Assembly: GCA_001179505.1 (NCBI GenBank)
Contig: CDMY01000249.1
Coordinates: forward strand, 62,001 to 126,000
DNA from: Vitrella brassicaformis CCMP3155
Taxonomy: Eukaryota; Protista; Chromerida
Length of the DNA: 64,000 bases
Direction: 5' to 3'
The position numbers and the translations under genes were made by a program. The notes below the pieces were generated by a model, which had not been told where the DNA came from, made no database searches, and saw only the letters and a list, made by a program, of their open reading frames with translations. This document shows, piece by piece, positions 194 through 59,267 of this stretch; the stretch's first letter is position 1; every line of letters begins with the position of its first letter.

Positions 194-661
194 AGGAATG
201 GAGGATGAGTAGACAGGCGGGAATGTCTAGAGGGAGGGAGGGAGGGAGGGAGGGGTGGGATTTGGGTGGTGTGTGCATAGGAGGGGACAGATGGATGGTT
301 GTGTGGGCCGTCCACATGGAAGGGGGGGATGTGTCAAATGACTCGGCTATCGGTCTACACATGAATCGACGGTGACTGAGCGGCGCGCCCGTCGGTTCGC
401 GACAGCCGCCGGCCAGAGCAAAGGGAGGGTCTGAGTGTCCTTGAACTCAGCCGTGCATGCACCATTGACCGCACACGCGCACGTACCCGAGAAAGGGCAT
501 GGAAGGTATCACTCGACTACTAGCTAAGCTCGCAGATCGGGGTGTTCCCCCTTCCAAGTTTCAACACCCGTACGGCTATTGTCTTGTGTGCCCACGTTGT
601 CATCTTTCTCCGTCAATTTTTCCCCGTCCGGCTCCCCTCTGCACAAGGCTGCGCCATCTGA

Positions 662-3661
662 ATGACTCAACCTGACGAAGGTGGACGGCCGGTGCTGTGA
701 CCATTCACAACGGGCACGCGAAAGCCTGACTCGAAATCAATCGGCCTCAAGCAATGGCGGTGGAGGTGAGGCGAAGGAAAAACCCAAAGCCCCTTTTGTG
801 TTTATGCCTTCTGGGGGTTCGTTGCTTGTGTCCAGGCTGAGTCGGAGATCGACATCTTCGACGCCGTCAAGAAGGGCGACGCGGATTCTGTCACGGCGCT
901 GATCGACCGGGACGGCACAGCCATACTCAATAAAACGAAACGAGACAAATACAATTCCGATGTATGCAGTCGTGAGGACGACATGAATGCCCTTGTCGTC
1001 TGTATGTGTGTTCTCATTTCTGCGCGCAGGTCACACCCTTCGGCATGGCTGCACAGGAGGGTCACGTGGGCGTCATGTCGGTCATGTATGAACGCAAACC
1101 TGACGTCTTGCAGCAAACAGACACTGTACTGACGCACACAAAGCACCTTCTGTGCCGGTGGAGATGGAAAAAGATGTGTTTGGTGTGACGGAATGTAGCA
1201 TGGTGCGAATGCCCCGCACGAGGCTGCCCAGGAGGGCCAGGTTGCGGCGGTCAATAAGCTGCTGGAGTGGGATCTCAAACTGATCGATGCACGCGACAAG
1301 GTAACAGAGCACACACATGTCTCTGACGCCTCAGTGTGTGCTGGTGTGTTTTGATTGCAGGATGGCAAGATCCCATTCATCGATGCTGCCTGGAAGGGTC
1401 AAATTGATGTGATGGAGACCCTGTATGCCAAAGGAGGGAAGGGCTGCCTCACACAGAAGAGCAAGGTCACAATCGAAGACAAACCATCTTCTGTGCGGCT
1501 GGTGAGGAGAGATGTTCGCTGTGATGGAATGCAGCTTGGTGACTCTGCCGTGCACTGGGCTGCCTTCAATGGTCGTGTTGCGGCTGTCAATCAGCTGCTG
1601 GAGTGGGATCTCAAACTGCTCGATGCACGCACCGAAGTTACAGACCACACACATGGCTCTGACGCCTCAGTGTGTCGATTGTGTGTGTGTCTTGATTGCA
1701 GAATGGCCGCACGCCATTCATGGTGGCTGCCACCTATGGTCATGTCGATGTGATGGAGTTTCTGTATGCCAAACGAAAGGACGTGCTCACAAAGACCGAC
1801 AAGGTGAGACAACACAGTCTTCTCTCACAGCCTGATTGCCTTTCCCTGTGTGCATGACACACACAGAACGGCGACACGGCACTCCATTTGGCTGCACTTT
1901 ATGGCCACTCTGCGGTTGTGTCTCAGCTGTGAGCGACAGAGATGACTGACTGACGCGGACATCTCATCCACACACACTCTCTCTCTCTCTGCGTGTGTGT
2001 GTGTGTGTGTGTCCTTCTCAAAGGCTCGAGTGGGGCGGCGGTGCGCTGCTGGACATCAAAAACAATGGGGTGAGTGCCGACGACAAGAATGCACTCAGTG
2101 GTCTGTGTGTGTGTTCTCATTCCTGCAGATGACCCCCTTCCTGTTGGCTGCGGAGAAGGGCCACGTGGGCGTCATGTCGGTTATGTATGAGAGCAAACCT
2201 GACGTATCGCAACAAACAGACAGCGTGGTACCGACACAGACAAACCATCTTGTGTGCTGCTGATGATGAGGAGATGTGCGTTTGGGTGTGATGGAATGTA
2301 GCATGGTGCGAATGCCCTGCACTTCGCTGCCATGAATGGCCATGTTGCGGTCGTCAATCAGCTGGTGGAGTGGGATCCCAAACTGATCGATGCACGCACC
2401 ACCAATGTAACAGAGCACACACATGTCTCTGACGCCTCAGTCTGTCGATTGTGTGTGTGTGTGTGTTGATTGCAGGTTGGCCACACGCCATTCATGGTGG
2501 CTGCCATAGGTGGTCGTGTCGATGTGATGGAGTTTCTGTATGCCAAACGAAAGGACGTGCTCACACAGCAGAACAAGGTGAGATACACAGAATGCCTCTC
2601 GTCTAATTGATTGCCTTTCTTTGTGTGCATGACATACACAGGACGGAGACACGGCACTCCATTTCGCTACACTCGATGGTAGAATTGAAGTGATGAAGTT
2701 CCTGTACGAGATGGACGCGCCCATCCTGCAGCAAAAAGGCGACGTACCAACCTAAGCATCTTGTGTGCTGCTGGTCATGGTGAGAAGATGTGCGTTGGGT
2801 GTGATGGTGCAGACTGGTTGGAATGCAATACATGCGGCTGCCCAGGAGGGCCATGTTGCGGTCGTCAATCAGCTGCTGGAGTGGGATCCCAAACTGATCG
2901 ACGCACGCAACAATGTAACAGAGCACACATATGTCTCTGACGCCTCACTGTGTCGATTGTGTTCGTTGCAGGAGGGCCTCACGCCATTCATCACGGCTGC
3001 CATAAAGGGTCATGTCGATGTGTTGGAGGCCCTGTATGCCGAGCGAAAGGACCTGCTCACACAGAAGGCCATCGTGAGACAACACAGCCGAAGACACATA
3101 GGGAGTGCCTCTCTGATGTGTGAGTGTGTTGATTGCAGAATGGCGACACGCCATTCATGTTGGCTGCCTACAATGGTCATGTCGATGTGATGAAGTTTCT
3201 GTATGCCGAAGGGGGGGAAAAACTGCTGACACAGACGAACAAGGTGAGAGACACACAGGATGCCTCTCATCTGATTGATTGGCTTTCACTATGTGCATGA
3301 CACACACAGTACGGACACACGGCACTCCATTTGGCTGCAGCCGGAGGCCACTCTGCGGCTGTGTCTCTGCTGTGAGCGACACAGATGAATGACTGACGCG
3401 AACGTCTCATCCACACCCTCTCTCTCTCTCTCTCTCTGTGTCATTCTCAAAGGCTCGAGTGGGGCGGCGCTTTTCTGCTCTACATCAAAAACAACGATGT
3501 GAGTGCACACAGAGATTCACACCATCGATGGGCTGAGTGGTGTGCTCACTCATCACAAACAGGGATGTACGCCCTGGGATTTGGCGGAGAAGAAGCCGGA
3601 GATCAGAGAGATCATGCGGCCGTACAAGCCTGCTTCTGGGTCTTGCTGTGTGATCATGTGA
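662..3661 (+). CDS. Multi-exon ankyrin-repeat protein (about 14 repeats) ending in CaaX (CCVIM)
   Basis: Exons such as 1199-1300 HGANAPHEAAQEGQVAAVNKLLEWDLKLIDARDK, 1361-1465, 1535-1636 and 1702-1803 are bounded by AG/GT. The last exon reads GCTPWDLAEKKPEIREIMRPYKPASGSCCVIM-TGA (3659-3661). The start is uncertain: exon 1 has a 4-nt insertion relative to the paralogue at 4498. Confidence 0.85.
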
Positions 3662-3807
3662 GTCAGAGTCTGTCAGTCGCTCGGAGGTGCATCGAATGAG
3701 AGTCTAGGAGGCATTGTGAGTGGGTGATTTGACAATGAGACCCGATTGATCATGTGTCGTCGTAAACGACACGGCGAAATGCAGCCCTCGGTTTCTTTCT
3801 TGTGTCT

Positions 3808-4160
3808 TCATGTGGACCATTGCGAGGGGCTGTGAGGTGCTGTGTGTTTGCCATGAGACATCAAGACTTGATTGGAGATGTCCATCAACACGTGAGCATG
3901 TAGCCCTGAATCTCTCTCTGTATTGATGCTGCCCTGCCGGCTGGTCAGCTGCTCGCGGAGGCTGCGATTCTCCTCGTGCAGAGCGCCGAAAGTCTGCATC
4001 AGTGACATAAGGAGACACAGACTTACGCCGATTAGCAGTCTCTGTCATTGGCTCACACACACCTGTTGGTTGACAGTCTGTCTGGCCCTCTCCTTGTCGA
4101 GGCAGCTCTAGAGCCGCCGATTCTCTAACGCAGCCGCCTGCAACTCACGCTGAAGATGCA
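3808..4160 (-). pseudogene. Duplicated 3' part of a small coiled-coil gene (copy of 12360-12630)
   Basis: Exons AIVHLQRELQAAALENRRL and LMQTFGALHEENRSLREQLTSRQGS are nearly identical to the 12.4-12.6 kb copy. Homology stops near 4230. Confidence 0.5.
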
Positions 4161-4497
4161 CTATCGCCTGACAAACACACACACACACACACGCCCTCCC
4201 CGATTCGTGCATTATCCGGACCCTCACATCTTCGATTGTCTTGACCTCTTGTCCTCCTGCCGTGTAGGCACCCGTCTCCTGCCTTTCACTCCGGGGAATG
4301 AGGGCGATCGGGGTCCTAAAGTGGCTGAGGGTGACACATAGGCGCACTGAGCTAAGCTCGCAGATCGCGGTGTTCCCCCTCCGAGATTCAGACAGCACCC
4401 CTACGCCTATTGTCCTGTGTGCCCACGTTGTCATCTTTCTCCGTCAGTTCTTCCCCATCCGCTGTCGCTCCCCTCTGCACAAGGCTGCGCCATCTGC

Positions 4498-6943
4498 ATG
4501 ACTCTGACGAACGTGGACGGCCGGTGCTGTGACCATCCACAACGGGCACGCGAAAGCCTGACTCGAGATCGATCGACCTCCAACAATGGCGGTGGAGGTG
4601 AGGGCGAAGGAAAAACCCAAAGCCCCATTTGCGTCTACGCGTTCTGGGGGTCCATCGGGTGTGTCCAGGCCGAGGCAGGTATATATATCGACATCTTCGA
4701 CGCTGTCAAGGCAGGCAGCGTGGATTCAGTCACGGCGCTGATGGACAGGGATGGGACTCAAATACTCAAAAAGCGAGACAAACGAGAAGTGAGAGAGAAG
4801 AGACCCCCCGGTGGTGTGTCGTTGATTCCTCTGTTTCCCTATCTGGGCGCAGTTCACTCCTTTCATCGCAGCTGCGAAGGACGGTCAAGTTGAGGCCATG
4901 AAGGTCATGTATGAGAGATGCAGCAGCCCGGAACTCTTGCAGCAAACAACTCAGGTGCCTGCCTGGTGGCTGAGGGAGTGATTTGCAAATGTGTCGGCGG
5001 TGTTCTCTGTCCTGCAGAATGACGGCACGGCAACTTACTGGGCTGCGATGAACTGTCACCTTGCGGCTGTCAATCAGCTGCTGGACTGGGGGGGCCCCAA
5101 GCTGCTGTCCGCACGCGGTGGCGCGGTAAGAGACCACACATGTCTCAAGGCGGCTCCCTGCGCTGATTCTGTGAGCGGCTCTGCGTCGGATTGCAGCGGA
5201 GATTCTCGCCGTTCATGCGTGCTGCTGAGAACGGGCATTTGGATGTGCTGAAATCGATGTATGGCAAAGGGGGGAAGGGTTTGCTCATTCAGCAGGACAA
5301 TGTAAGAGACCGAGGAGGTGGCCAAGCCGCACAGGGGTCGGCGGGTCATGCTTCTCCCTCTGTCGGCCTGTCTGCCAGGCTGGACAGACGGCACTGCACG
5401 TTGCTGTTTACAAGGGCGAAGACGCAGTCGTTGCTCAGCTGTGAGAGGGAAACCTAGCCACTCGACATCTCATTTGCAGTGTCTCCGTCTGCGCATGGTG
5501 CTGCAGGCTGCAGTGGGGTGGGCCGTCCCTTCTGCGCATCAAAGATGATTCGGTGAGTGCACATACTTTTGCAGACCATCGATCGCTGGTGACGCACTTT
5601 GCCTGAACAGGGCGAAACGCCGTGGCAGTATGCCAACAGAAGCCCTGCCATCCAGGGAATGTTTGAAATATGCACTGAGGTCCCAAAGAAAGCCGTCGAT
5701 GTCGTCCTGAGACAGATCAAACGTGTACGAGGACAAGAAAAGATGCCATTTGCTTTCACATGATGTATCTCTGTCTCAGCGGAACATCTTTGCAGCTGTG
5801 AAGGCCGGTGATCTCACATCGGTCACTCAGCTGATGAAACTGCACGGGCCGGAGACTGTCGAAAAGAGAGAGAGCGGCTGTGAGCCGTGTTGGTATAGAA
5901 CATGCGCCTGTTACCTCGATGGGGTAATGCCATTTCAGGTTGCAAGCGATCAATTCGCTGAGATCTTCACCTGTCCATTCTTGCAGCTTTATGGGATGAC
6001 GCCTTTCCTTTTCGCATCGCGCAAAGGGCATGTTGAGATCATCAATCACATGTACAGCAAAGCGGGGCTTCCGATTCTGCTGCAGAGGGGCGCTGGTGGT
6101 TGGTCTGCCGTGCACTTGGCTGCCATGGAGGGCCATCAGAAAGCGGTCGCGTGGTTGCTAGAGGTTGGCGGCTTCGATCTCCTCACGTTCAGAACAACCA
6201 TGGCGAGATACCACCACACATGTCTCGCCTGATGTCTGATGATGAGATGTCTTGACTGTGATTGAATGCAGTTTGGCTGTACTCCCCTTCATTGTGCTGC
6301 CATGAGGGGCAGCGCCGGAGTTGTCGAGACCATGCTTCACTTCTTGGAAGGCACTGAACTACTCGAGACAAAAGCTGCCTTCAAGGTGCGTAGAAATTCA
6401 ACCTGCTGGAATCTCGTCCACACGCCAATCTGACTGGGTCTTTCCTGCAGTCTATCACTCCCTTCATCTTCGCTGTCTGCTATGGCCATATTGATGTGAT
6501 GAAACTCATGTACGCCAAGATGGGGAAAACTTAGAGACAAAACTGCTTACACAGCAGGACTCTGTAAGAGTCGCCCAAAGGCACACCAAGATGTCCAGTC
6601 CGGTTGACTGGCGTTTGTCTTGTGTACACGCCATTTGTTGCAGGAAGGTGATACACCCTTGCATTACGCCGTGAGGGCAGAACAATATCGTGCTGTGGCC
6701 CAGCTGTAAGGGACAGAGGACAGGGAATGATGGGACATCTGCATCAGGATGTGTCACGTGGATCAGGATGGAATGGGGAGGACCGATTCTTCTAGAAATA
6801 AAGAACAACGACGTGAGCGCACACCGGTTGACAGAAAGCCAATGGCTACCCTTGTTTGTTGTTTTCCACAGGGTCGCACGGCGTGGGATAAAGCACCTTT
6901 CTTTGGGCGAATTAGGGGAGTGATGAAGAAATACAGACAATAG
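4498..6943 (+). CDS. Multi-exon ankyrin-repeat protein with two ankyrin modules
   Basis: ATG at 4498. Exons include IDIFDAVKAGSVDSVTALMDRDG, SPFMRAAENGHLDVLKSMY and TPFLFASRKGHVEIINHMY...SAVHLAAMEGHQKAVAWLL. Final exon GRTAWDKAPFFGRIRGVMKKYRQ-TAG at 6943. Confidence 0.8.
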
Positions 6944-7335
6944 GTCTGAGGCTTAGAGACTTGTGGCTGAGCAGCCATAGAGAGACATGAGCAGCGCAGG
7001 ATTCTCTTTGTCGTATGCACTTGGTGTGGCCGGATTATAGGCTGTATGTTGTGTCTTTTGACAGAGAGAAAGATGAACATTGACTGCCACCATCAAAGGG
7101 GCAGTGAAAAATGGCAGTAATACCGTGTAAGTTCGTGTTTGTCCGTGCATGTGTACTGGTGAGTCTCTTCGAGCCTATTGGGATCATGAATGAGCCCACC
7201 ACGCATCAGACCAAACACATACAAATGGAGGGATCACTCATAGAGGGATCACCCGGAAGACAAGCAAACGTGCTTCAATGAACGAGGGATCTCCTCGGTC
7301 CTTCTGCTTGTCCAAACCGCCGTTTTTGCGTGAGT

Positions 7336-7416
7336 TTTCCGCATGGAAAGCTGGATTTCCGCCTGGAAAGCTGGCCTTCTGCACTGCAAAGCTGGCTTTC
7401 CGTGGCGCTGGCTGGC
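7336..7416. repeat. Four degenerate 20-21 nt tandem units, the first two internally palindromic
   Basis: tttccgcatggaaagctgga / tttccgcctggaaagctggc / cttctgcactgcaaagctggc / tttccgtggcgctggctggc. Confidence 0.7.
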
Positions 7417-7908
7417 TTTTCTGAGTGTCTGTCCAGCTTTCTGAGTGGAGGGCCCACTTGCCGGCCGAAGCACCAGCTTTTCGCCGCGTGAACGAGAGAC
7501 AGAGAGATACAGACACTAGTACTAAGAGTCTTGAAAGGCAGGCAGGCAGGCAGACAGGCGGAGGGAAGAAGGGATGTCATTAGATGAATGGATCGTCTTC
7601 ATCTGCTTCCAATCCATTCATTGGTTCTTGCCTTGTCTTGCCCAAGCAACAGGTAAGATGGCGATGTCTCTCCCTCTTTAACCTCCTAATGTCTTGCCTT
7701 ATGTAACCCGGCCTTTGGACGAGGTAGCTGAATTCCGACACACGTCTGGCCCGATGGTGAGGATTGTTTTACTTGTGGGGCATTGAGTGGTGTTTGATGG
7801 TCATTTTGGGTTCAAATGACCGGCATGGGCCGTTCGGTTGGGGGCCCCGTGGGGGCCCAGCATTCGAGACCATCGAGTCGGTCCTCTCTCCCTTCCCGGA
7901 CTCCGGCA

Positions 7909-10900
7909 ATGGCTGGGGTGCCTCGTCTGGTGATCTACGCCAGGGACCTCACCTTCAGTGAGGATGACAAACTCGGTGAGCGAGGGGGTGAGCGAGGGGG
8001 TCAGCATGCTGTCCGCATGGGCATGATCTTTGTGTCTGGGGCAGGGAGGGGGGGATTCGGTGTCGTCTATCGGGGCGTCTTCAAAGGGCGGCCCGTGGCC
8101 GTCAAGGTCGCTCACCCCAGCGAAGAGCTCGCCCCGCACGTGCGTACACAGAGCGGCAGAATTGACCTCACTCGTGGGGTGACCTCGCATCTGTGTGTTG
8201 TGTGCAGGAGCAGTTCATTGAGGTTCTGCGAGAGGTGGAGCCCATGTTCCACCTGCGCCATCCCAACATCGTGGAGTTCCTGGGCGTGTGTGCGGCAGAC
8301 GAAAAGCACGGCCTTATGATCGTCACTGGCAGGCGCTGCGTCTCCTTCGCTTCATCCAATTGTCTTCCTCTGTGCGTCTGCCGCCATTCTCAGAGTTGTG
8401 TGAGTGCGGATCGCTGGACAAATATTTGGCCAAGAACAGACCTTTGCCCCCCGATGTGCGAGACAGATTTGTGAGAGAGGTACGCACTGCAGACAGCGTC
8501 ACGCGTCTCATCTACCGGTGTGTCGATTGCCGTCAGATATGTGAGGGTGTCCAGTACCTTCACGACCACGGGATCGCTCACCTGGATCTCAAACCAGGGA
8601 ACATTCTGGTGAGGGAGAGCCATCTCCCGGTCAACGGCCGCAGGCTGGTTTCATGTCCCACTTGTTTGTCAGTTGGCGAAGTATCTGGTGATCAAAATAT
8701 CTGACTTCGGTATGACGCGCAACACTCAGAGGACAACGAGTTCTTTTGCAGGTGGACAGAGACACTCACACGGAGACAGAATGCATCCAATGCATTCATA
8801 CCTTTGCTGCAGGCGGGGGGACGTACAACTTTATGTCACCGGAAACAATGAATCCAGAGAAATGTAAGGAAGGATCCCTGTGAAGGGCGGCGTCCCGTGA
8901 CTGCCCATTTGTGCAGTGGTCAAGCCTTCTACCAAGTCGGATATCTGGACGTTGGGCGGGATTCTGAGCGAGCTACACGGAGGGCAGCGGATTCATAAGT
9001 CCACATGTCAGACGCACTATGAGATGGTGGCTGATCGTGATGCTTAGGCGGGCCGCCCTTCGAAGGCCAAAGTCCCGTCAGCATCATGATGGCAGTTGTG
9101 GTCGATAAACAGGTGACGTTCACGCGTATGACATGACAGACGCGACTTGCTTTGTCTGTTCTCATTAGATTCCCCGCATCCCCGATTCCGTGCCTGCGCA
9201 CATCAAAGCTGCCATCGAGGCAAGCCGAGAGACTTTCATGTGCCGCGTTTGGCTTCTGAGTGTGATTGCTTCTCAGAGTTGTTTTGCCTTCAAGCCGGAA
9301 GATCGTCCCACAGCCAGAGAGGTAGCGGTCATAGACTATTGGACAGAGGCGTGCGCATGTCGAATGTCTGCTTGCCTGACTGCTCGGTAGTTGTTAGCTA
9401 AGCTGGGCATGTCGTCGTCTCCGTCAAAAGGTGCAGGTCCACTGACTGTCAAATGACACGAGAAGGCCCAGTCGCTTCATCCTGACTGCTTGACTGCGTG
9501 CAGAGCCGGTGTTGGTTCACCCTGCCCCTGTGTCTCCTGCTGTCGTGTCTCCCACTGGCCATTCATCGGGCGTTCACGTGAGCATGGCCAGCACCGCAAC
9601 GGGGCCGCCGAGTGCGGTCTCGCCCACACAGATCAAGCTTTTGGTTCCGCAAGAGCAGACAGGTCGGCTGTGGAAGGCACGTACACACACACAGAGAGAG
9701 ATACGACTGGTCATTCATGATTTGTATGGTGCAGCGTTCCCTACCCAGCAGCCGTCAGCGAAGACACCGCCCAACGTCCCACAGCCGCAGATCAAACACG
9801 TAAGAGAGACAGAAACTGAATCCCACACGTCAATGGGCCGCTCTTATTGTGCTGGTTGTGTGTCAGACTGACATCTTCAAAGCCGTCGAGGAAAATGATG
9901 TGCAATCCGTTCGTTGGCTCATCGAGCGAGACGGCAAGGACATACTCGACAAACGAGGCCACTTCGAGGTATGCAACTTTGAAGATGACAGAAATGCCCT
10001 CAGTGGTCTGTCTGTGTATTCGTTCCTACAGAATACACCTTTCCTGTTGGCTGCAAAGAAGGGTCACGTGGGCGTCATGTCGGTCATGCATGAGAGCAAA
10101 CCTGACGTACTGAAGCAAACAGACCAGGTAACAACACAGACAAACCATCTCGTGTGCTGCTGGTGATAAAGAGATGTGCGTTTGGGTGTGATGGGATGTA
10201 ATAGAATGGTTTCACTGCCCTGTACTTGGCTGCCTGGTTTGATCAAATTGAAGCAATGAAGTTTCTGTACGAGATGGACGGGTCCATCCTACAGCAGACA
10301 GGCCCGGTACCAACCTGAGCATCTTCTATGCTGCTGGTTATGGTGAGAAGATGTGTGTTGGCTGTGATGGAATGCAGGATGGTTGGAATGCAATACACTT
10401 GGCTGCCGAGAAGGGCCGTGTTGCGGCTGTTAATAAGCTGCTAGAGTGGGATCCCAAACTGATCGATGCACGCACCAATGTACCAGAGCACAGACATGTC
10501 TCTGACGCCTCAGTGTGTCGATTGTACGTGTGTGTGTTGATTGCAGTTTGGCTTCACGTCATTCATGCGGGCTGCCAACAATGGTCATGTCGATGTGATG
10601 AAGGCCCTGTATGCCAAACGAAAGGACCTGCTCACTTAGACGGACAAGGTGAGACAACACAGTCTTCTCTCACTGCTTGATCGCCTTTCCCTATGTGTGC
10701 ACGCCACACACAGAGCGGCAACACGGCACTCCATTTGGCTGCAATGAATGGCAAAATTGAAGCGATGAAGTTTCTGTATGAGATGGACGGGTCCATCCTG
10801 CAGCAAACAGGCCAGGTACCAACCTAAGCACCTTCTGTGCTGCTGGTCATGGTGAGAAGATGTGTGTTGGCTGTGATGGAATGCAATAGGATGGCTACAC

Positions 10901-12107
10901 CGCTTTGCACTGGGCTGCCCACGAGGGCCATGTTGCGGCGGTCAATAAGCTGATGGAGTGGGATCCCAAACTGGTCGATGCACGCACCACCAATGTAACA
11001 GAGCACACACATGTCTCTGACGCCTCAGTGTGTGTTTGTGTGTTGATTGCAGGGTGGCATGACGCCATTCATAGTGGCTGCTGGGCAGGGTCGTGTCGAT
11101 GTGATGGAGTTTCTGTATGCCAAACGAAAGGACCTGCTCACACAGACAACCAATGTGAGGCACGCATGGAGATACACAGAATGCCTCTCATCTAATTGAT
11201 TGCCTTTCTTTGCATGCATGACACACACAGAACGGCGACACGGCACTCCATCAGGCTGCGTACAAAGGCAAAATTGAAGTGATGAAGTTCCTGTACGAGA
11301 TGGACGGGTCCATCCTACAGCAAAAGGGCCAGGTACCAACCTGAGCATCTTCTGTGCTGCTGCTGGTCATGGTGAGAAGATGTGTGTTGGCTGTGATGGA
11401 ATGCAGGATGGTTGGAATGCAATACATGCGGCTGCCCAAGAGGGCCATCTTGCGGTCGTCAATAAGCTGCTGGAGTGGGATCCCAAACTGATCGATTCAC
11501 GCGTTGCCAAAGTAACAGAGCACACACATGTCTCTGACGCCTCAATGTGTCGATTCTCTGTGTGTGTGTGTGTCGATTGCAGTATGGCTGGACGCCACTC
11601 ATGAAGGGTGCCATGAAGGGTCATGTGGATGTGATGGAGGCCCTGTATGAGAAACGAAAGGACCTGCTCACACAGACCGACAACGTGAGACAACACAGTC
11701 TTCTCTCATCTGATTGATTGCCTTCTGTGCATGACACACACAGAAAGGAGACACGCCACTCCATTTGGCTGCGTACTGGGGCAGCTCTGCAGCTGTGTCT
11801 CAGCTGTGAGACACAAATGACTGACTGATGCGAATGTCTCATCCACACTCTCTCTCTCTCTCTCTGTGTGTGTGTGTCATTCTCAAAGGCTCGAGTGGGG
11901 CGGCGGTGCTCTGCTGGACATCAAAAACAACTCGGTGAGTGCCCACAGAGATTAACACCATCGATGGGCTGAGTGGTCTGCTTATTTCATCTCATCTCAT
12001 GACAACAGAAGGAGACGCCCTGGGACAAGGCAGAGGGCAAGCCGGAGATCAGAGAGATCATGCGGCCGTACAAGCCTGCTTGTGGGCCTTGCTGCGTGAT
12101 CATGTGA
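7909..12107 (+). CDS. TKL-like protein kinase (non-RD) fused to an ankyrin array, C-terminal CaaX; one ankyrin exon carries an in-frame TAG
   Basis: GRGGFGVVYRG, VAVK, IAHLDLKPGNIL, ISDFG, GTYNFMSPE, KSDIWTLG. A Pro/Ser linker follows, then the N-cap DIFKAVEENDVQSVRWLIERDG at about 9870 and about 11 ankyrin repeats. Ends KPACGPCCVIM-TGA (12105-12107). TAG at 10637-10639. Confidence 0.85.
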
Positions 12108-12359
12108 GTCAGAGTCTGTCAGTCGCTCGGGTGTGCATCGAATAAGAAGCTAGGAGGCGTTGTGAGTGGGTGATCTGACAGTGAGACCCGATTGATCATG
12201 TGTCGTCGTAAATGACATGGCAAATACGAATTGCAGCCCTCGGTTTCTTTCTTGTGTCTTCATCGACCATTGCGAGGGGCTGTGAGGTGTTGTGTGTTTG
12301 CCATGAGACATCAAGACTTGATTGGAAATCATGTCCATCCACACGTGAGCATCCAGCCC

Positions 12360-12850
12360 TCAGTTTCTCTCTGCAATGATGCTGCCCTGCCGGCTGGTCA
12401 GCTGCTCGCGGAGGCTGCGATTCTCCTCGTGCAAAGAGCCGAACGTCTGCATCAGTGACATAAGGAGACACACACCTCACGCAGATTAGCAGTCTCTGTC
12501 ATTGGCTCACACACACCTGTTGGTTGACAGTCTGTCTGGCCCTCTCCTTGTCGAGGCAGCTCTTGAGCCGCCGATTCTCTAACGCAGCCGCCTGCAACTC
12601 ACGTTGAAGACGCAATATCGCCTGACAAACAATCACACACACACACACACACACACACATAGACAGACACACATGCACACAAAGCTTCCCGATTCATGCA
12701 TTATCTGGCCCCGTCACACACTGTGCGTGTCCGTGTGTGACGCTGTGTGTGTGCGCTCTCACTGACATGCAGCCCCGGGCGTCGCACATCTCGTCCCACA
12801 CACGTACCTCGCGGATCTCCGACTCCCCACACCATCGCCGCCTTGTGAGC
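12360..12850 (-). CDS. Small coiled-coil protein (start not resolved)
   Basis: Spliced exons ...ESEIRE|AILRLQRELQAAALENRRLKSCLDKERARQT|...LMQTFGSLHEENRSLREQLTSRQGSIIAERN-stop. No in-frame ATG was found upstream. Confidence 0.45.
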
Positions 12851-28988: not shown

Positions 28989-30652
28989 ACATGGCTCACC
29001 ATTCAAACCAAACGCTTCGGGCGCCATGTAAAGCCTTGTGCCCGCTCCTGCACACGCAATTGTGCACATGGACACCTAGCCTGACTCGCGGCGGCAGCGT
29101 CTTCTTCTCGTTTGTCTGTCACCGCCTTGAGCCGACACTGTTCTGTTGAGATCGATGACGAGCCCGAAATCGGTAATCTTGATGTCTTCTCCCTTGGTCA
29201 CCTGCACAATAAAGAAATGGGTGCGAATGGACGTTGCAGTCTTGCAACTTACAAGTATGTTGCCGGGCTTCAAGTCACGATGTACTATATTCTTGTCGTG
29301 AAATGACTGCACGCCCTCACAAATCTATCCGACGACAGATGAACGGGTGCTCTGATTCAGCCCTCTGTGCCCGTATTAGCTACTTACCTGTTTCGCAAAC
29401 TTGTCGCGGAGATTGGCCGGCAGAGGACCCTTCGTCCTCTCGAGAAACGACTGCAGTGAGCCACCCTCGCACAACTCTGAGACACACGAAAGCAACCACC
29501 AGGCAAGAAAAGTCAGAGGGTAACGAGCACATGGACAACCCACCCACCTGATATGATCATGGGTCCGTAAGTTTCGTGAGAGCAGATGCCCAGAAAGGTG
29601 ATGACATAGGGGTGCCTGATATGCAACATCGGCTCCACCTCCTTCAAGACGTCGTCATAGAGAACCTGTATGAAAACATGTCGTATCTATTCGTTGGTCC
29701 GTGGATCGAGCTGCCGTGCCGACGTGGATGGGTATGATTTTCCTGTCCTCCTCATTGACGACCTTGATAGCCACCGGCTGACCTTTCCACAGCCCCTTGT
29801 AAACCGTGCCAAAGCCTCCGGCTCCTTGACAGACGCACACATTCAATTGACCAGATGTGGGCATGCGATGGCCTCTGGCTCACCGAGTCTGTCTGCCTCG
29901 CTGAATCTGATGTTTTGCCGATCGATGCGCAGGCGGAGAGCCGCCGCCATGACGGACTGCTTATCGCCCTTTTTCGTCGTCTACGAACACAAAGCCAAAG
30001 CAAGTGGGTCGTGTGTGATGAGCAGGTGCCCTCTCACGTATTTCATCGGCGGTGCCGGTGCCTGTCCTGATGCATTCTGGCCAGATGGCACTGCAACGCA
30101 CACAGCATTGGATGCAATGATGTGCCAGATCAGCATGTGAAGACAGACAGACCTGTTTGCTGCTTGTATTTTTCCATGATCTCTCTGATTTTCGGCTTCC
30201 CAGCCGCCAAATCCCACGGCGTTTTTCCCTGCCAAATTCAAATGCGTCACTGAATCATTCGACCATTCACAAGTCTGTGTGCACTTGTTTCGTCGTTCTT
30301 GATGTCGAGGAGATTGACCCCGGCCTCAACGCCCCACTCCAAGCTGCATTTGGGCACAGAGGGTGAGGAGAGAGAGACTACATAATGGTTGGTTTGGGTT
30401 GTTCATTAGTGCCGCTTACAGCTGAGCCACCGAATCGCGTCCGCTGTTCTTGACAGCCTCGTGCAGCACTGTCTCTCCGACCTGTGTGTGTGATGCTCAG
30501 AGCAGGGCCGTCAAGGAAGGACTGCGAGAAGGGAATCTGCTTCTCACCTCGGTCTGGTGTGTGAGGATGTTCTGCTTGTCGTGCCCTTTGGCATACATGG
30601 CTTTCAGCACATCAACCCAATAATTCGCAGCAATAAACGGCGTCTGACCAGT

Positions 30653-38235: not shown

Positions 38236-38445
38236 GCAGGGGGGGCCATGTTGCTGCGGTCAATAAGTTGATAAAGTGGGATCCCAAACTGATCGACGCA
38301 CGCACCAACGTCAGTTTCAATTGCAGAAAAGAGAGCTCACACATGTCTCTGACGCCTCGGTGTGTCGATTCTGTGTGCGTGTGTTGATTTCAGCATGGCA
38401 CCACGCCATTCATGTCGGCTGCCGTGGGTGATGAAGTCGATGTCT
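38236..38445 (+). pseudogene. Orphan ankyrin exon-intron-exon fragment
   Basis: GGHVAAVNKLIKWDPKLIDARTN, then the family-typical intron (acacatgtctctgacgcctc..gattncag), then HGTTPFMSAA. No flanking family exons. Confidence 0.8.
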
Positions 38446-53913: not shown

Positions 53914-56900
53914 CTACTGCTTGTACTTTTCCATGACCTTCCTCATGCCCGGTTTCTCCGACGCCAAGTCCCACGGCGTCTTACCCTGACACACGAAAGC
54001 GCTCCTCTCGTCCATTCACAAGTCTGTGTGCACTCACTTCATAGCCTTTGATGTCGAGGAGATTGACTCCGGCCTCAACGCCCCACTCCAACCTGGACTC
54101 GCACACAGAGAGGGTGAGGAGAGAGCGGCAAAGTTGATTTGCGTTATTCATTAGTGTCCCTCACAGCTGGGCCACCGAATCGCCTTTACTGGCCTTGACA
54201 GCATCATGCAGCACTGTGTCTCTGAGCTGTGTGTGATGCTCACAGAGAAAGGCCGTCAACGAATGACCGAGAGATCTAGCTGTTTCTCACATTGGTCTGG
54301 TGTGTCAGCATGTTCTGCTTGTCCTGCCCTTTGGCATACAGGGCTTTCAGCACGTCAACGTGATAACGCGCTGTGATGAACGGTGTAGTGCCAGTCTGCA
54401 GCCCACAGACAGACAGACAGAGACAGACAGATAGACAGACAATATCGACACCAGCAAGGCGTCAGAGACACTTGTGTGCTGTAACCTTGTCGCATGCATC
54501 GAGCAGTGTGAGATCCCACTCCAGCAGCTTATTGACAGCCGCGACATGGCCATTGGCGGCAGCCCAGTGCATGGCGGTCCGACCATTCTGTTGCATTGCA
54601 TCACAACCAACATCTCTTCATTTGAGCTGATGGACATGCACCTTGTATGTTTGCTTCAGAATCGACGGCCCATACGCGTCGTACATGAGCGGCATGGCAC
54701 CGGCCTGACCACGCGATGCAGCGGCAAGGAAGGGTGTGTCCTACATGCAGCCAACAATGAGAATCTCCCCTTTGAATCCTTTCTTTCGTCTGATTACCCC
54801 GTGGTCGTTTCGTTTATCCAGTATTGCTACACCGTGAGTCTTGATCATTTGGGTGAGAGCCGCACACTCGCCCTTCTTCGCGGCCTTGAACGAGGCCTCG
54901 ACAACCTCATACTCGTCAGCCTGTCGAGGACAGTCAGGAACACACACAGCTTACTCCGAAGGCGCTGCTGCTGCATGGGTCCATCGGGGTGTACGTGTTT
55001 GATGTTTGACGGTTGTGGAGACGCCGGTCGGCTGGCTGGCGCTGAGGGCGAGACCGGCTTGGGTGGGGGCGTGGAAGTCCCCGTCAGCACCTTGAGAAGC
55101 TGATGTAGGCAACAACATGCCGTTCGTCCATCCCAAGATGATGCGTCTCATTCACCTGTCCCGCTGTGGGCCGATCGTTAGGCTCTAGGGAAGAACATTT
55201 CTGGTGATCCATCCATCACACACAGAGACAGGGAGATAAGGGTTCCCAAAGCGTCGCAGCGTGGCGACGTCCGCTTACTTTGATGACCTCTTTGGCCTGT
55301 AGGGGCACAGAGTCGGGGATGTCGGGTGCCTGAGTACAAAGGCGGTGACAGTGCCTTCAGCTATGGCGGTGACAATGGACAATGCCTCAGCTATGTGCCG
55401 TTCTTTATCGCACGTTTTCTTCAGTTGACCTGTCTAAGTCTTATGAGTTGTTGGAAGAGAACCAGCAGCGAGACGCCATGCAGCTCGAGAATGATGATCC
55501 CGAGGGCCCAGATGTCCGCCTTGGTCGTCAGATTCTCAGCTACCAAAGAGTAAGAAGTTGACAATTCTTTCCTGCTAAATGTCGCTCACCGTTCAACGCA
55601 AATGCTTCGGGCGCCATGTAAAGCCTTGTGCCCGCTCCTGCAGATGCAAGAGTGCACATGGACACGTAGCCTGACTCGCGGCGGCAGCGTGTTCCTCTCA
55701 TTTGTCTGTCACCGCCTTGAGCCGACGCTGTTCTGTTGAGGTCAATCACTAGCCCAAAATCGGTAATCTTGATGTCTTCTTCCTTGGTCACCTGCACAAT
55801 AAAGAAACGGGTGCGAATGGACGTTGCAGTCTTGCAACTTACAAGTATGTTGCCGGGCTTCAAGTCACGATGTACTATATTCTTGTTGTGAAATGACTGC
55901 ACGCCCTCACAAATCTATCGGGCGACAGATAAAAGGGTGCTCTGATTCAGCCCTCTTTGCCCGTATTAGCTACTTACCTGTCTCGCAAACTTGTCGCGGA
56001 GATTGGCCGGCAGAGGACCCTTCGTCCTCTCGAGAAATGACTGCAGTGAGCCACCCTCGCACAACTCTGAGACACACGAAAGCAACCGCCAGGCAAGAAA
56101 AGTCAGAGGGTAACGAGCACATGGACAACCCACCCACCTGATATGATCATGGGTCCGTAAGTTTCGTGAGAGCAGATGCCTAAAAAGGTGATGACATAGG
56201 GATGTTTGAGGGACAGCATCGGCTCCACCTCCTTCAAGACGTCATCATAGAGCACCTGTATGAAAAGATCCATCTCTATTCGTCGGTCCGTGGATCGGGT
56301 TGCTTTCCCACGTGGATCGGTATGAGTTTCCTGTCCTCCTCATTGACGACCTTGATAGCCACCGGCTGGTCTTTCCACAGCCCCTTGTACACTGTCCCAA
56401 AACCTCCCTTTCCTGGCCCACACACACATTAGCTGACCACATCTCGGTATGCGATTGGTCTCGGGCTCACCGAGTCTGTCTGCCTCGCTGAATGTGATGT
56501 TTTGCCGATCGATACGCAGGCGGGGAGCCGCCGCCATGACGGACTGCTTATCGCCCTTTCTCGTCGTCTACGAACACAAAGCCAAAACAAAGGGGTCGTG
56601 TGTGATGATCAGGTGCCCTCTCACGTCGTTGATCTGCGGTGCCGGTGCCTGTCCTGATATATGCTGGCCAGATGGCACTGACACGCACACAGCATTGGAT
56701 GCAATGATGTGTCCAGATCAGCATGAAGACAGACAGACCTGTTTGTTTCTTGTACTTCTCCATGATCTCTCTGATGTCCGACCTCTCCGCCGCCAAATCC
56801 CACGGCGTCTTACCCTGCCAAATTCAAAGGAATAGACCATCCAACCGTTCGTCGGGACTTGCCTTCTTGTTCTTGATGCCGAGGAGGGAGACGCCAGCCT

Positions 56901-59267
56901 CAGCAGCCCACTCGAGCCTGAAGCTCCGTACGCAGACAGAGAATAAATTCGTCGTGTCATTCCTCTGCGTCTCTTACAGCTTGGCCACCACATCGCCGGG
57001 TTTGGAAAGCAAGAGAGCTTGGTGGAGGGCATTTCCACGACCCTATTGCATTCCATCAAAGCCAACACGTCTCCTCACCACCAGCAGCACACAGGATGGC
57101 GTGTATGTGTCGCTACATTGTCTGTTTGCTGCAGTACGTCAGGTTTGCTTTCGTACATGACTGACATGACGCCCACGTGACCGCTCTGTGCAGCGTGAAG
57201 GAAGGGTGTGAACTGCGCGCAGGAATAACACCACATACAGGCCGCTGGGTGCATGTCTGTCGGCTTCTTGATTGCATACTCCTATGAAGTCTCGTTTGTC
57301 GAGAATGTCCTTGCCGTCTCGCTCGATGAACAAACGGACGGACTGCTCATCGCGAGCCTTGACCGCCTCGAAGATATCGGCCTGCACATTAAGAATGCCA
57401 AAGTACATTCGACGCTCCCTCAGCCTCCCTGTTGCATGTACTTCGTGTGCGTACGTGTTCGGCGTTTGACGGTTGTGGTGACAAAGATGGGGTGCCGGGC
57501 GCTGAGGGCGAGACGGGTACTGGGGCTGGCGTCGGGGTAACTGCATATGCGGTAAGCCTTAAATTGGTCATCTCATCTGCATTAGTAGCCCACCGAGACT
57601 GCTGTTGGGCCGTGGGTCGGGGGTCACTGCCATCGACAGCACGTCACATGAGGCAATCTGGGTGAGCAGTGGTGGTGGGGTGGTGTGTCACCTGGCCGCG
57701 GCCTTTCGTTGGTCAGTTTGTCGAGCAGCTGCCGCAGAGCAGCACGTCAGAAGCACAGAGACACAGGAACGTCATCTCTTGAAAGCCTCAGTCAGAGCGC
57801 GTCACTTCATCTCTTGTGCGCTCGGCCGACTTCTTGGATTGAAGGCGAAACAACTCTGGTGGGCCACGTGAACAACGCGACAGGTGCATTCACCATGTAC
57901 GCAACATTGTGCGTCCGGTGTCTTGCCTGGATGGCCTGCTTGACATTGACGGGGATTTCTGAGGGGATGGGGGGCGCCTGCATGACACAGGAACACACGC
58001 CTGCTAACAGAAGCTTGTCCACACACTTATGCAGCCGCCACCTCTCTATTCTCGTATATCTTCCTCGCGATCTCCCTTTTACTGAGGCCAGCGAAAGCCG
58101 GAGATGCTACAGATACAAGGGGCCACCAGCCCTCCTGTGTGCCGTGCTTTCTCTGTGTCTCACTCACCGCCGAATATTTCTGCAAAGATCAATCTGACTG
58201 GCCAGATGTCCGACCTGAGCTCCAAGTGGGGCCCTGAGAGGTGACAGGAATCTCACTAACTGTATGATTATCAATGTCATTCTGCAAGTACTGTCTGCGT
58301 AGGCCTCTGGGGGGGCATATAGGGGAGTTCCCGCTGCAGCCACGCAAGTATGGGTCGCTTTGGGATTAGATCTTTGCGTCTGTTACCGAAGTCATGGACG
58401 CTTAGGTACGACCTCTCCTCGGGCATCACCCAAGCCAGACCGAAGTCTGAGAGCTTCACATTTCCGTCGTTGTCCAGCTGCACATCAAGCAGAGAAGACA
58501 CATGGATGTGAACAAATTATGCTACTGCTGCATGTCTCAGCCACCAGAATATTCTCGGGCTTGAGGTCACGATGGCCGATGCCTTTGCTATGGGCATGGA
58601 TGAGACCCCCACATATCTGATACACAGAAAAAGCAAAAGTGATAAACACACGGAATCGCGAACTTTAAGTCCGCCTCACCTGCTTGGCATACTTGTACTG
58701 CAGGTGCTCGGGGACTCCTGACTTCCTTCTGCCCAGTTTCTTGAGAAATTTGTCCAGTGAATCCTCATAGTACTCTGCACGATAGATGGCACCTACCTCT
58801 TCAGTTCAGTGTTCAGGTGTATCCTCAGACGTATCTCTCTTTCTCACCGAGGACGAGAAGGGGAATCTTCGTGTCGTAACACACACCTAGCAGCCTCACG
58901 ACATGAGGGTGCTTCAAGCGGGCCAGGGCGTCGGCTTCCTGCAGAACTTTGTCTTTCAGACCCTGCACAATCACACAAAGATCAGCACGAGACCGGGGAC
59001 GCCCCTGCCGATGGCTATCACCTCTCTGCCGAAGACCTTCTCGAGTTCTCTTTTCGCCTTCTTGATGGCGACCCTCGTCTCGCCCCACATGGCCTTATAC
59101 ACCTGCAACATGGACATCAGGAGGTGTGTGTCACTGTATGACTGACTGCAGCAGTTGTTCTTTCGGCCGACCTCAGCGAACGCACCACCTCCAACGAAGT
59201 CCTCTTCATCGTCCCAGTGGAGGTCATGAATTCGTATCGAGTCTATCTGGACAGAGCCGCGCCTCAT
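53914..59267 (-). CDS. Tandem kinase-ankyrin-kinase-ankyrin protein
   Basis: Kinase 1 (GGGAFAE|VY, VAIK, HRDLKPEN, SDFG), Pro-rich linker, ankyrin module (57330-56760), linker exons in consistent phase (..KYKKQT|VPSG..QIND|TTRKGDKQSVMAAAP), kinase 2 (HRDLKPGN, TDFG, YMAPE), linker, ankyrin module, ending VMEKYKQ-TAG. Junction phases were checked by eye only. Confidence 0.75.

What the first reader, a model, noticed from the sequence alone, without database searches (positions are those of the whole stretch)
836..12107. One ankyrin repeat per phase-0 exon, with hypervariable binding positions: a candidate exon-shuffled receptor repertoire
Seen: nearly every ankyrin repeat is a separate 102-105 nt exon between phase-0 introns (e.g. 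1199-1300, 1535-1636, 1702-1803, 10547-10648). A few exon classes recur together with their introns, including a three-exon unit tandemly repeated three times at about 10.2-11.7 kb. Within one class the scaffold (AVNkLLEWDpKLiDAR) is almost fixed while the N-terminal residues and those around H-x-AA-x-x vary widely: HGANAPHEAAQEG, LGDSAVHWAAFNG, HGANALHFAAMNG, TGWNAIHAAAQEG, DGWNAIHLAAEKG, DGYTALHWAAHEG, LGRTAMHEAALLG, NGRTAMHWAAANG. Known: these map to the beta-turn and helix-1 binding face randomised in DARPin libraries, and one-repeat-per-exon shuffling is described for ROCO LRR and NB-ARC TPR genes of the brown alga Ectocarpus. Inference: a natural combinatorial binding library diversified by unequal crossover and possibly exon skipping, perhaps for pathogen or prey recognition.
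Basis: partly seen in the sequence, partly recalled or inferred. Interest (0 to 1): 0.85.

Follow-up and report, generated by a model that had tools for sequence, protein, structure and literature searches.

The report
Fast-evolving ankyrin gene family, exon-per-repeat
Three neighbouring genes of the coral-associated alga Vitrella brassicaformis encode ankyrin-repeat proteins, one fused to a kinase, in which nearly every repeat is its own exon and the usual target-binding residues change several times faster than silent sites, as in immune-type sensors, though what they bind is unknown.

Summary
The stretch 836-12107 holds three tandem genes of Vitrella brassicaformis, not one array.

- Gene A (754-3661) is an intact 16-repeat ankyrin protein.
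- Gene B (4586-6943) is a diverged paralogue.
- Gene C (7909-12107) is a TKL-type kinase plus 12 ankyrin repeats. It carries an in-frame TAG and an intron that is retained in an RNA contig, so it is probably decaying.

Nearly every repeat is one 96-105 nt exon between short phase-0 GT-AG introns. The exons fall into recurring classes (A, B, C, D, E) that travel with their introns. A C-A-B unit occurs three times in gene C.

At the four positions matching those randomised in DARPins, non-synonymous change is about 3.8 times the silent rate (P about 7e-9). The framework ratio is about 0.6. The signal holds in intact gene A alone.

Genes A and C end in CCVIM, a farnesylation motif, and have no signal peptide. 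Any recognition is therefore intracellular, not prey capture.

Exon skipping is not shown: one transcript contig fits it but may be an assembly chimera.

The family was found only in Vitrella (24 annotated models on 15 contigs). This scan already flagged it on other DNA of this genome (s1-239435). The closest analogues are brown-algal exon-per-repeat receptors and fungal NLR ankyrin repeats.

The parts
754..3661 (+). Gene A: 19 exons, 558 aa, 16 ankyrin repeats in two modules (N-cap, D A B A B E / D A B C A B B E, tail F). No kinase. Ends in CCVIM.
   Evidence: Splice model has an open frame and all introns are GT-AG. The public model starts at the same ATG but stops at 3388, missing the phase-2 intron and the last exons.
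4586..6943 (+). Gene B: diverged paralogue with two ankyrin modules. Exon 5987-6213 holds two repeats. There is a probable 1-nt loss in an A-run in the exon at about 6452-6562, and a GC donor at 6214.
   Evidence: Equals annotated protein P0224, 455 aa. Its 3' introns 6706-6766 and 6813-6871 are confirmed by an RNA-type contig.
7909..12107 (+). Gene C: 28 exons giving a TKL-type kinase, a Pro/Ser-rich linker, and 12 ankyrin repeats (N-cap, D, (C A B)x3, E, F). Ends in CCVIM. Probably decaying.
   Evidence: Splice model. Pfam kinase and Ank hits on single exons. Paralogues with the same layout: P0221, P0228, P0233, P0239. The public annotation splits it into three models at the two TAGs.
7909..9321 (+). 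Kinase-domain exons of gene C (GRGGFGVV, VAVK, HLDLKPGN, DFG, SPE). Intron phases are mixed. Two GC-AG introns start at 8329 and 9220.
9007..9047 (+). 41-nt GT-AG interval needed to keep the kinase frame open. It contains a TAG at 9045-9047. Paralogues read GG(R)-PPFEG here, so the ancestral donor is probably lost.
   Evidence: The RNA-type contig of run X1 runs unbroken across 8917-9110. The public kinase model stops at 9047.
10205..11684 (+). Three tandem copies of the three-exon C-A-B unit with their introns (periods 509 and 517 nt).
10637..10639 (+). In-frame TAG in class-B exon 10547-10648. Paralogous exons have CAG (Gln) here.
   Evidence: No other base was reported by the DNA runs. A public gene model ends here.
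3647..3658 (+). CaaX box CVIM of gene A, with a further Cys just upstream.
   Evidence: Read directly from the sequence.
12093..12104 (+). CaaX box CVIM of gene C.
   Evidence: Read directly from the sequence. The same C-terminus occurs in P0220, P0221, P0228 and P0239.
1929..2023 (+). Phase-2 intron splitting the terminal (E) repeat. Equivalent introns lie at 3372-3452 and 11806-11888.
   Evidence: The homologous intron of gene B is confirmed by RNA.
3662..4200 (.). 3' flank of gene A, duplicated behind gene C (12108-12654) at about 93% identity. This marks a segmental duplication covering the 3' ankyrin module and its flank.
562..856 (+). 5' region, first exon (MAVE) and first intron of gene A, duplicated in front of gene B (4393-4689) at 79-90% identity.
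54327..57384 (-). Further family exons (N-cap, D, A, B, E/F-like) on the minus strand. More fragments lie at 30151-30399(-), 35750-35890(-) and 38244-38453(+).

Best explanation
These are three tandem members of a young gene family found only in Vitrella. The family encodes ankyrin-repeat proteins, many fused at the N-terminus to a TKL-type protein kinase.

Shown:
- Each repeat is one exon between short phase-0 introns.
- Arrays differ by whole exon-plus-intron units.
- The residues on the hairpin loop (exon positions 1 and 3) and on one face of the inner helix (positions 8, 11, 12) change several times faster than synonymous or intron sites, while the framework is conserved.

Inferred:
- Arrays grow and shrink by unequal recombination in the near-identical introns and framework. 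Because all units are in phase 0, every such event stays in frame.
- Selection then favours new residues on the target-binding face.
- Genes A and C lack a signal peptide and end in CCVIM (CVIM is the K-Ras4B farnesylation box, with an extra Cys that could be palmitoylated). The proteins are therefore probably tethered to the cytoplasmic side of membranes.
- There they bind variable intracellular protein ligands. In kinase-fused members binding would be coupled to phosphorylation. Kinase-less members such as gene A could act as adaptors or decoys.

The most likely biological setting is some genetic conflict or self/non-self recognition, as for fungal NLR repeats and brown-algal ROCO/TPR genes. 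The ligand and the setting are unknown.
For: - Gene models with open frames and canonical splice sites.
- Splice junctions seen in RNA-type contigs and cDNA contigs for the window and for paralogues.
- Exon register equals the Pfam Ank register.
- The same one-exon-per-repeat layout at four other loci of the genome.
- Selection test, parsimony counts on 7 A-B units: synonymous 0.66 changes per site, A>B intron 0.30, the four positions fixed beforehand 2.54 (ratio 3.8, P = 7e-9), position 8 ratio 4-5, framework 0.62.
- Matched gene A and gene C segments: non-coding divergence 7.2%, synonymous 18%, framework non-synonymous 12%, binding positions 42%.
- Same result within intact gene A alone: uncorrected pN/pS of 3.9 and 4.5.
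- Between dispersed loci: pS 0.23 against pN 0.65 at the hypervariable codons.
- AlphaFold model of P0031 (pLDDT above 90 over residues 85-245) puts positions 8, 11 and 12 in the first helix and positions 1 and 3 in the preceding loop.
- Best solved matches are ankyrin-R/B, NOMPC and DARPins.
- P0221 and P0228 have kinase N-terminal parts about 97% identical but ankyrin parts only 50-75% identical, with a different repeat number.
- The family was found only in Vitrella among 5.8 billion proteins: 24 annotated models on 15 contigs.
- CCVIM recurs in six members.
Against: - No ligand, localisation or expression response is known.
- The selection test is a counting method on short exons with a star-like, poorly supported tree. 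56% of informative site pairs are incompatible, so recombination or gene conversion is present and can bias dN/dS.
- No orthologues from another strain were available.
- Gene C is probably broken and gene B may have a frameshift, so part of the locus is decaying.
- Many family members lack the CaaX box, and two have hydrophobic N-termini, so one localisation does not fit all.
- Variation at exactly these positions between repeats is normal for any ankyrin protein. Only the rate excess is unusual.
Confidence: 0.6

Rival explanations
1. Concerted evolution without an arms race. The repeats are old and each has its own functionally fixed contact residues. Gene conversion and unequal crossover keep homogenising introns and framework, and purifying selection removes conversions that overwrite the contact residues. 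The high dN/dS would then be an artefact of erased neutral divergence.
For: - Identity among the C-A-B units is mosaic.
- There are four-gamete violations within 9 nt, and 56% of site pairs are incompatible.
- Blocks such as GWNAIH and AAQEG are shared in different combinations.
- A B/D hybrid exon occurs in P0228.
- Fungal NLR repeats are known to evolve in concert (PMC4986451).
Against: - The hypervariable codons are interleaved with invariant codons whose silent sites are also unchanged (GCTGCC at positions 9-10 in all seven A exons). Conversion tracts cannot skip single codons.
- Framework silent divergence is about the same within the tandem cluster (0.16-0.20) as between contigs (0.23). 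This fits a burst of duplication better than local homogenisation.
- Contact residues differ in every paralogue examined.
Confidence: 0.2
2. The phase-0 cassette layout is used at the RNA level. Regulated skipping of repeat exons or whole modules yields many in-frame isoforms from one locus, including skipping of the TAG-bearing exon 10547-10648.
For: - All array exons are symmetric (phase 0-0), so any skip stays in frame.
- Transcript contig L051 joins the D exon of module 1 of locus L002 directly to the A exon of module 2 at 100% identity on both sides, leaving out about 1.9 kb.
- Alternative splicing is reported for the analogous brown-algal ROCO genes (PMC11378527, title and abstract).
Against: - The two D exons of L002 share an identical 31-nt 3' end, so a k-mer assembler could have made the L051 junction.
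- L001 switches between paralogues inside an exon, which shows that these assemblies are prone to chimeras.
- cDNA L050 uses all exons in genomic order.
- No GT..AG exon-skipping joint was seen across gene C in the RNA-type contigs. The other skips there are non-canonical, short-sided partial matches that look like paralogue contigs. Only intron retention was seen.
Confidence: 0.12
3. Decay. The variability reflects relaxed constraint in a cluster of dying duplicates.
For: Gene C has a nonsense codon and a lost intron donor. Gene B has a probable frameshift. Several family fragments lie elsewhere in the window.
Against: Relaxed constraint cannot push dN above dS. The excess is confined to five positions per repeat while the framework ratio is 0.6. 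Gene A is fully open over 558 codons and shows the same signal on its own.
Confidence: 0.05

Closest known systems
Ectocarpus LRR-ROCO and NB-ARC-TPR genes (Zambounis et al. 2012, PMC3341825; follow-up PMC11378527)
   Same: Each repeat is encoded by one exon. Repeat exons are duplicated and shuffled. Genes are clustered with rapid birth and death. Diversifying selection acts on solvent-exposed repeat residues. The repeat array is fused to a signalling domain. The family is algal and lineage-specific.
   Different: The repeat type here is ankyrin, not LRR or TPR. The signalling domain is a TKL-type kinase, or is absent, rather than a Roc-COR GTPase or NB-ARC. Here three repeat classes alternate and each carries its own intron type. 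Part of the family has a C-terminal CaaX box. The organism is an alveolate, not a stramenopile.
Fungal NLRs with highly conserved ANK/TPR/WD repeats (Dyrka et al. 2014, PMC4986451)
   Same: Ankyrin repeats have a conserved framework and about five positively selected positions on the inner helix and the hairpin loop. There is repeat reshuffling within and between paralogues. The proteins are intracellular and are proposed to act in non-self recognition.
   Different: There is no NACHT or NB-ARC domain here. Within-class repeat identity is 68-76%, below the fungal criterion of 85%. Fungal repeats are not split into one exon each. Repeat-number polymorphism between strains was not tested here.
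RIPK4 / ANKK1-type kinases (N-terminal kinase, C-terminal ankyrin repeats)
   Same: The domain order of gene C and its kinase-bearing paralogues.
   Different: No evidence of orthology: sequence relatives were found only in Vitrella. The animal genes are single-copy and conserved, not an expanding, diversifying family.
DARPin combinatorial libraries
   Same: A fixed framework with variation at the loop and first-helix positions. The a-priori test set here was the DARPin randomised positions 3, 5, 13 and 14, as I recall them (exon positions 1, 3, 11, 12). DARPins are among the best sequence matches in the PDB.
   Different: This is natural variation, not a designed library. Position 8 (DARPin 10) also varies. 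Repeats are 34-35 residues long, with an extra short helix after helix 2.
Vertebrate ankyrin genes (ANK1-3), where most of the 24 repeats are encoded by single exons (recalled from memory, not checked here)
   Same: A one-repeat-per-exon layout in an ankyrin protein.
   Different: Those genes are conserved and show no sign of diversifying selection or of changes in repeat number.

Membership tests
Ankyrin repeat (Pfam PF00023 / PF12796) | A unit of about 33 residues matching the Ank profile | tested here: met
   Single class A and C exons pass Pfam's Ank cut-off, and the class B exon falls just below it (18.3 vs 21.1 bits). In each case exon residue 1-2 aligns to profile position 1-2. P0031 matches ankyrin-R/B, NOMPC and DARPin chains at E = 1e-64 to 1e-68.
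Ankyrin repeat (Pfam PF00023 / PF12796) | Helix-turn-helix plus hairpin loop, stacked into a solenoid | tested here: met
   AlphaFold model of P0031: pTM 0.80, pLDDT above 90 over residues 85-245, with regular pairs of helices in each repeat.
Exon-shuffled repeat receptors of the Ectocarpus type | Each repeat encoded by one exon | tested here: met
   Confirmed by cDNA.
Exon-shuffled repeat receptors of the Ectocarpus type | Number and order of repeat exons differ between paralogues (shuffling) | tested here: met
   Exon-class orders differ between gene A, gene C and loci L002-L005. Unit relationships are mosaic. P0221 and P0228 differ in repeat number.
Exon-shuffled repeat receptors of the Ectocarpus type | Diversifying selection on exposed repeat residues | tested here: met
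   Counting method only: ratio 3.8, P = 7e-9. Likelihood site models were not run.
Exon-shuffled repeat receptors of the Ectocarpus type | LRR or TPR repeats joined to a Roc-COR or NB-ARC domain | tested here: not met
   The repeats are ankyrin. The only other domain found is a protein kinase.
Fungal-NLR-type hypervariable ANK repeats | A NACHT or NB-ARC nucleotide-binding domain | tested here: not met
   Precomputed Pfam lists for family members show only kinase, Ank and (once) MORN.
Fungal-NLR-type hypervariable ANK repeats | Internal repeat identity of at least 85% | tested here: not met
   Class A exons are 68-76% identical in protein sequence.
Fungal-NLR-type hypervariable ANK repeats | About five positively selected positions on the inner helix and hairpin loop | tested here: met
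   Positions 1, 3, 8, 11 and 12.
Fungal-NLR-type hypervariable ANK repeats | Repeat-number polymorphism between strains | not tested
   No second strain could be compared. The one read-laying run was used on contigs.
CaaX-prenylated proteins | C-terminal Cys-aliphatic-aliphatic-X with X = M/S/Q/A/C | tested here: met
   CVIM at the C-terminus of genes A and C and of P0220, P0221, P0228 and P0239.
CaaX-prenylated proteins | Actual farnesylation and membrane attachment | not testable with these tools
   Needs biochemistry or imaging.
Active protein kinase (TKL-like) | Gly-rich loop, VAIK Lys, catalytic HxD...N, DFG and APE motifs | tested here: inconclusive
   All motifs are present in the gene C model, with HLD for HRD, and Pfam kinase hits occur on single exons. 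However, the frame depends on a 41-nt intron that is retained in RNA.

The most novel reading that the evidence does not exclude
The symmetric phase-0 repeat exons are used as splice cassettes. Regulated skipping of single repeats or whole modules (as in the L051 junction that joins module 1 to module 2, or skipping of the TAG-bearing exon of gene C) would give each locus many in-frame binding-surface isoforms. That would be a Dscam-like combinatorial receptor system in a unicellular alveolate, layered on top of germ-line diversification.
Probability: 0.12. Interest if true: 0.85.

Novelty: new variant of a known kind. Interest (0 to 1): 0.6.

Why it matters
Chromerids are the closest photosynthetic relatives of apicomplexan parasites and live in association with corals. 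My searches of the held library found no paper on this family or on ankyrin-repeat expansion in Vitrella.

This family combines three things:
- the gene layout known from brown-algal candidate receptors (one repeat per exon);
- the evolutionary regime known from fungal NLR ankyrin repeats (a fixed framework with about five fast-changing contact positions);
- a different output module (a TKL-type kinase plus a lipid anchor).

If the members are intracellular sensors, that would be a further independent origin of a repeat-based recognition repertoire, and a tractable one, because short exons make the changes easy to follow. Practically, the public annotation of this locus is wrong in several places: gene A is truncated and gene C is split in three. 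Proteome-based surveys therefore underestimate the family.

Tried and rejected
- **Profile search of 1.84 billion representative proteins** with the class-A exon alignment. The top 150 were almost all giant generic ankyrin proteins. Only P0031 carried the family signature. Its use was to identify the organism.
- **Motif scan of the metagenome contigs** with an 18-mer from the conserved A-exon framework. It gave 44 single chance matches and none was family-related.
- **Test of whether the conserved introns are functional.** Rfam found nothing. Folding intron plus A exon plus intron gave z-scores of -0.07 to -0.46, with only a local hairpin in the upstream intron. Intron divergence between dispersed paralogues (0.19) is close to silent-site divergence (0.23). 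Intron conservation is therefore explained by the youth of the family, and I dropped the idea.
- **Apparent excess of silent over intron divergence** in the gene A / gene C comparison (18% against 7.5%). I judged this explicable by splice-signal constraint in introns of 57-95 nt and by the known bias of the Nei-Gojobori count, so it is not a finding.
- **PHI-like recombination test.** Not significant, with high homoplasy at all distances.
- **Alternative genetic code for the in-frame TAGs.** Rejected. Gene B ends at a TAG, paralogues have CAG at 10637, and the second TAG lies inside an intron-like interval.
- **L001 as evidence for a new isoform of gene C.** Rejected as an assembly chimera, because the switch lies inside an exon at the conserved AVNKLLEWDPKLID stretch.
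- **RNA evidence.** It was limited to assembled contigs. No raw RNA reads were on offer.


Full report
**What is there**

The window comes from Vitrella brassicaformis CCMP3155, contig CDMY01000249.1 of assembly GCA_001179505.1. A predicted protein of the window (P0031 = CEL96932.1) identified the organism.

The finding's stretch, 836-12107, holds three plus-strand genes, not one array.

- **Gene A (754-3661)** splices from 19 exons into an uninterrupted 558-codon frame. All its introns are GT-AG and 57-95 nt long.
- **Gene B (4586-6943)** is a more diverged paralogue and equals the annotated 455-aa protein P0224.
- **Gene C (7909-12107)** needs 28 exons. It encodes a TKL-type kinase (GRGGFGVV, VAVK, HLDLKPGN, DFG, SPE), a Pro/Ser-rich linker and twelve ankyrin repeats.

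The 5' region of gene A is duplicated in front of gene B. The 3' module and flank of gene A are duplicated in gene C and behind it.

**Check of the observation**

The quoted exons are exact.

In gene A, 14 of 16 repeats are single exons of 96-105 nt in phase 0. The last repeat of each module (class E) is split by a phase-2 intron. Gene C has the same layout from 9867 onward, while its kinase introns have mixed phases. Gene B has one exon that holds two repeats.

Exon residue 1 aligns with position 1 of Pfam's Ank model, so the introns sit at the repeat boundary.

Exons fall into classes, each followed by its own intron type:
- N-cap
- D (TPFLLAA..GHVGVMSVMYESKPDV)
- A (..AVNKLLEWDPKLIDAR)
- B (TPFM.AA..GHVDVME.LYAKRKDLL)
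- C (TALH.AA..GKIEVMKFLYEMDGSIL)
- E
- tail F

Gene A reads N D A B A B E / D A B C A B B E F. Gene C reads N D (C A B)x3 E F. The triple unit lies at 10205-11684. Four other loci of the genome show D, A and B again as separate exons.

**RNA support**

Only assembled contigs were on offer.

- RNA-type contigs show GT..AG joints at 6705>6767, 6812>6872 and 11934>12009, and pieces that begin exactly at exon starts 8917, 9867 and 11053.
- cDNA contig L001 matches gene C exons 11583-11684 and 11744-11805 at 100% and continues through 11889-11934 (94% over an overlapping hit) and 12009 onward (98%), joined as modelled.
- cDNA L050 uses all exons of paralogue L003 in genomic order, at the predicted boundaries.

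**State of the genes**

- Gene A is intact. The public model stops early, at 3388, because it misses the phase-2 intron. It therefore loses the CaaX exon.
- Gene C has an in-frame TAG at 10637-10639 where paralogous exons have CAG.
- Gene C's kinase frame also depends on a 41-nt interval (9007-9047). Paralogues show that an ordinary intron once sat there (they read GG(R)-PPFEG). An RNA contig runs straight through the interval, and it contains a TAG.
- The public annotation splits gene C into three proteins at exactly these two TAGs. Gene C is probably a recently disabled copy.
- Gene B seems to have lost one A from an A-run near 6530. The annotators avoided this by using a donor inside the exon.

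**Variable positions and selection**

Before counting, I fixed as the test set the exon positions that correspond to DARPin randomised positions 3, 5, 13 and 14. These are exon positions 1, 3, 11 and 12. The mapping rests on my knowledge of the DARPin design plus the Pfam register.

Counts were made on the seven A-B units of the window, with a tree built from introns and framework. The tree is star-like and weakly supported. Parsimony counts:

| Site class | Changes per site | Ratio to synonymous |
|---|---|---|
| Synonymous sites | 0.66 | 1 |
| A>B intron | 0.30 | n/a |
| Intron upstream of A | 0.59 | n/a |
| Test positions (non-synonymous) | 2.54 | 3.8 (binomial P = 7e-9) |
| Position 8 (noticed afterwards) | n/a | 4-5 |
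| Remaining framework | 0.41 | 0.62 |

The four test positions are 4 of the top 5 codons of 32 in class A, and the top 4 of 24 in class B.

Further comparisons agree:
- For the matched segments of gene A and gene C, non-coding divergence is 7.2%, synonymous 18%, framework non-synonymous 12%, and the test positions 42%.
- The signal holds in intact gene A alone: uncorrected pN/pS is 3.9 and 4.5, against 0.67-0.78 for the rest.
- Between dispersed loci, framework pS is 0.23 and pN at the five variable codons is 0.65.

An AlphaFold model of P0031 (pTM 0.80) places positions 8, 11 and 12 in the first helix, with i, i+3, i+4 spacing, and positions 1 and 3 in the loop before it. This is the region reported as the binding face, and as positively selected, in fungal NLR ankyrin repeats (PMC4986451).

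**Caveats**

- Variation at these positions between repeats is normal for ankyrin proteins. The unusual part is the rate excess over neutral sites.
- Recombination is evident. Identity among the C-A-B units is mosaic. Motif blocks are shared in different combinations. 56% of informative site pairs are incompatible, although a distance-based test was not significant. A B/D hybrid exon occurs in P0228. Gene conversion could therefore have erased neutral divergence and inflated the ratio.
- Against that view, invariant codons with unchanged silent sites are interleaved with the variable ones. Silent divergence is also about the same within the cluster as between contigs. That fits a recent burst of duplication.

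**Shuffling at gene level**

P0221 and P0228 are encoded on different contigs. Their kinase N-terminal parts are about 97% identical and their linkers about 90%. Their ankyrin parts are only 50-75% identical and contain different numbers of repeats. Either the arrays diverge much faster than the kinase, or arrays are exchanged between paralogues.

**Exon skipping**

This is not shown.

Transcript contig L051 joins the D exon of module 1 of L002 to the A exon of module 2 at 100% identity, in frame, leaving out about 1.9 kb. However, the two D exons share an identical 31-nt 3' end. L001 also switches paralogue inside an exon. An assembly chimera is therefore at least as likely as a real isoform. 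What the contigs do show is intron retention.

**Likely function**

Genes A and C have no signal peptide or membrane span and end in CCVIM. CVIM is the farnesylation box of K-Ras4B (established knowledge). The same C-terminus occurs in P0220, P0221, P0228 and P0239. Other members end in KKYKR-like basic tails, and two have hydrophobic N-termini.

I therefore read genes A and C as lipid-anchored, cytoplasm-facing binding proteins. In the kinase-bearing members, binding would be coupled to phosphorylation. A surface receptor for prey does not fit. An intracellular sensor or adaptor in some conflict or recognition process does fit, but this is inference.

**Distribution and literature**

Sequence relatives were found only in Vitrella. 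There are 24 annotated models on 15 contigs, plus transcriptome contigs. The next hits are generic ankyrin or MORN proteins.

I found no paper on this family. The closest known systems are the Ectocarpus ROCO-LRR and NB-ARC-TPR genes (PMC3341825) and fungal NLRs with conserved ANK/TPR/WD repeats (PMC4986451).

This scan had already noted the family on other pieces of the genome. One follow-up (s1-239435) reached a similar reading. My tests are independent of it.

**Verdict**

This is a new variant of a known kind of system: exon-per-repeat, fast-diversifying repeat proteins, here with ankyrin repeats, a kinase and a prenyl anchor in a chromerid alga. Interest 0.6.

Noticed in passing
window 754-3388, 7816-9047, 9086-10639, 10744-12107: The public annotation truncates gene A: it misses the phase-2 intron at 3372-3452 and the CaaX exon. 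It also splits gene C into three 'unnamed protein products' at the two in-frame TAGs.
   Followed up: yes
window 8329, 9220, 6214: Three introns appear to use GC donors (GCAGGC, GCAAGC, GCGAGA) with normal AG acceptors. All other introns modelled are GT-AG.
   Followed up: partly
L002:10315-12438 and L051: A transcript contig joins the D exon of module 1 to the A exon of module 2 of a two-module paralogue, in frame. The two D exons share an identical 31-nt 3' end, so it may be an assembly artefact.
   Followed up: partly
P0221 and P0228 (contigs of 95,438 and 148,739 bp): Two paralogues have kinase N-terminal parts about 97% identical but strongly different ankyrin arrays with different repeat numbers. 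P0228 contains a hybrid repeat, B-type at its 5' end and D-type at its 3' end.
   Followed up: partly
window 3700-4200 and 12150-12650, minus strand: The duplicated flank behind genes A and C contains a minus-strand open exon (MQTFGALHEENRSLREQLTSRQGS...). The segmental duplication therefore also copied part of a neighbouring gene.
   Followed up: no
window 7336-7402: A 20-nt tandem repeat (3.3 copies, TTTCCGCATGGAAAGCTGGC) lies in the spacer between genes B and C.
   Followed up: no
P0160, P0157: Two family members have hydrophobic, signal-peptide-like N-termini. Part of the family may therefore be secreted or targeted to an organelle, unlike genes A and C.
   Followed up: no
window 9430>9501: An RNA-type contig of run X1 joins 9430 to 9501, three bases upstream of the modelled AG acceptor at 9503. 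The skipped piece ends in TG. This may be a strain difference or a NAGNAG-like alternative acceptor. The frame is kept.
   Followed up: no
window 54327-57384 and 30151-30399, minus strand: Further family exons whose tail reads ...IREIMEKYK(K/Q)QTG, without a CaaX box. They appear partly fragmentary.
   Followed up: partly
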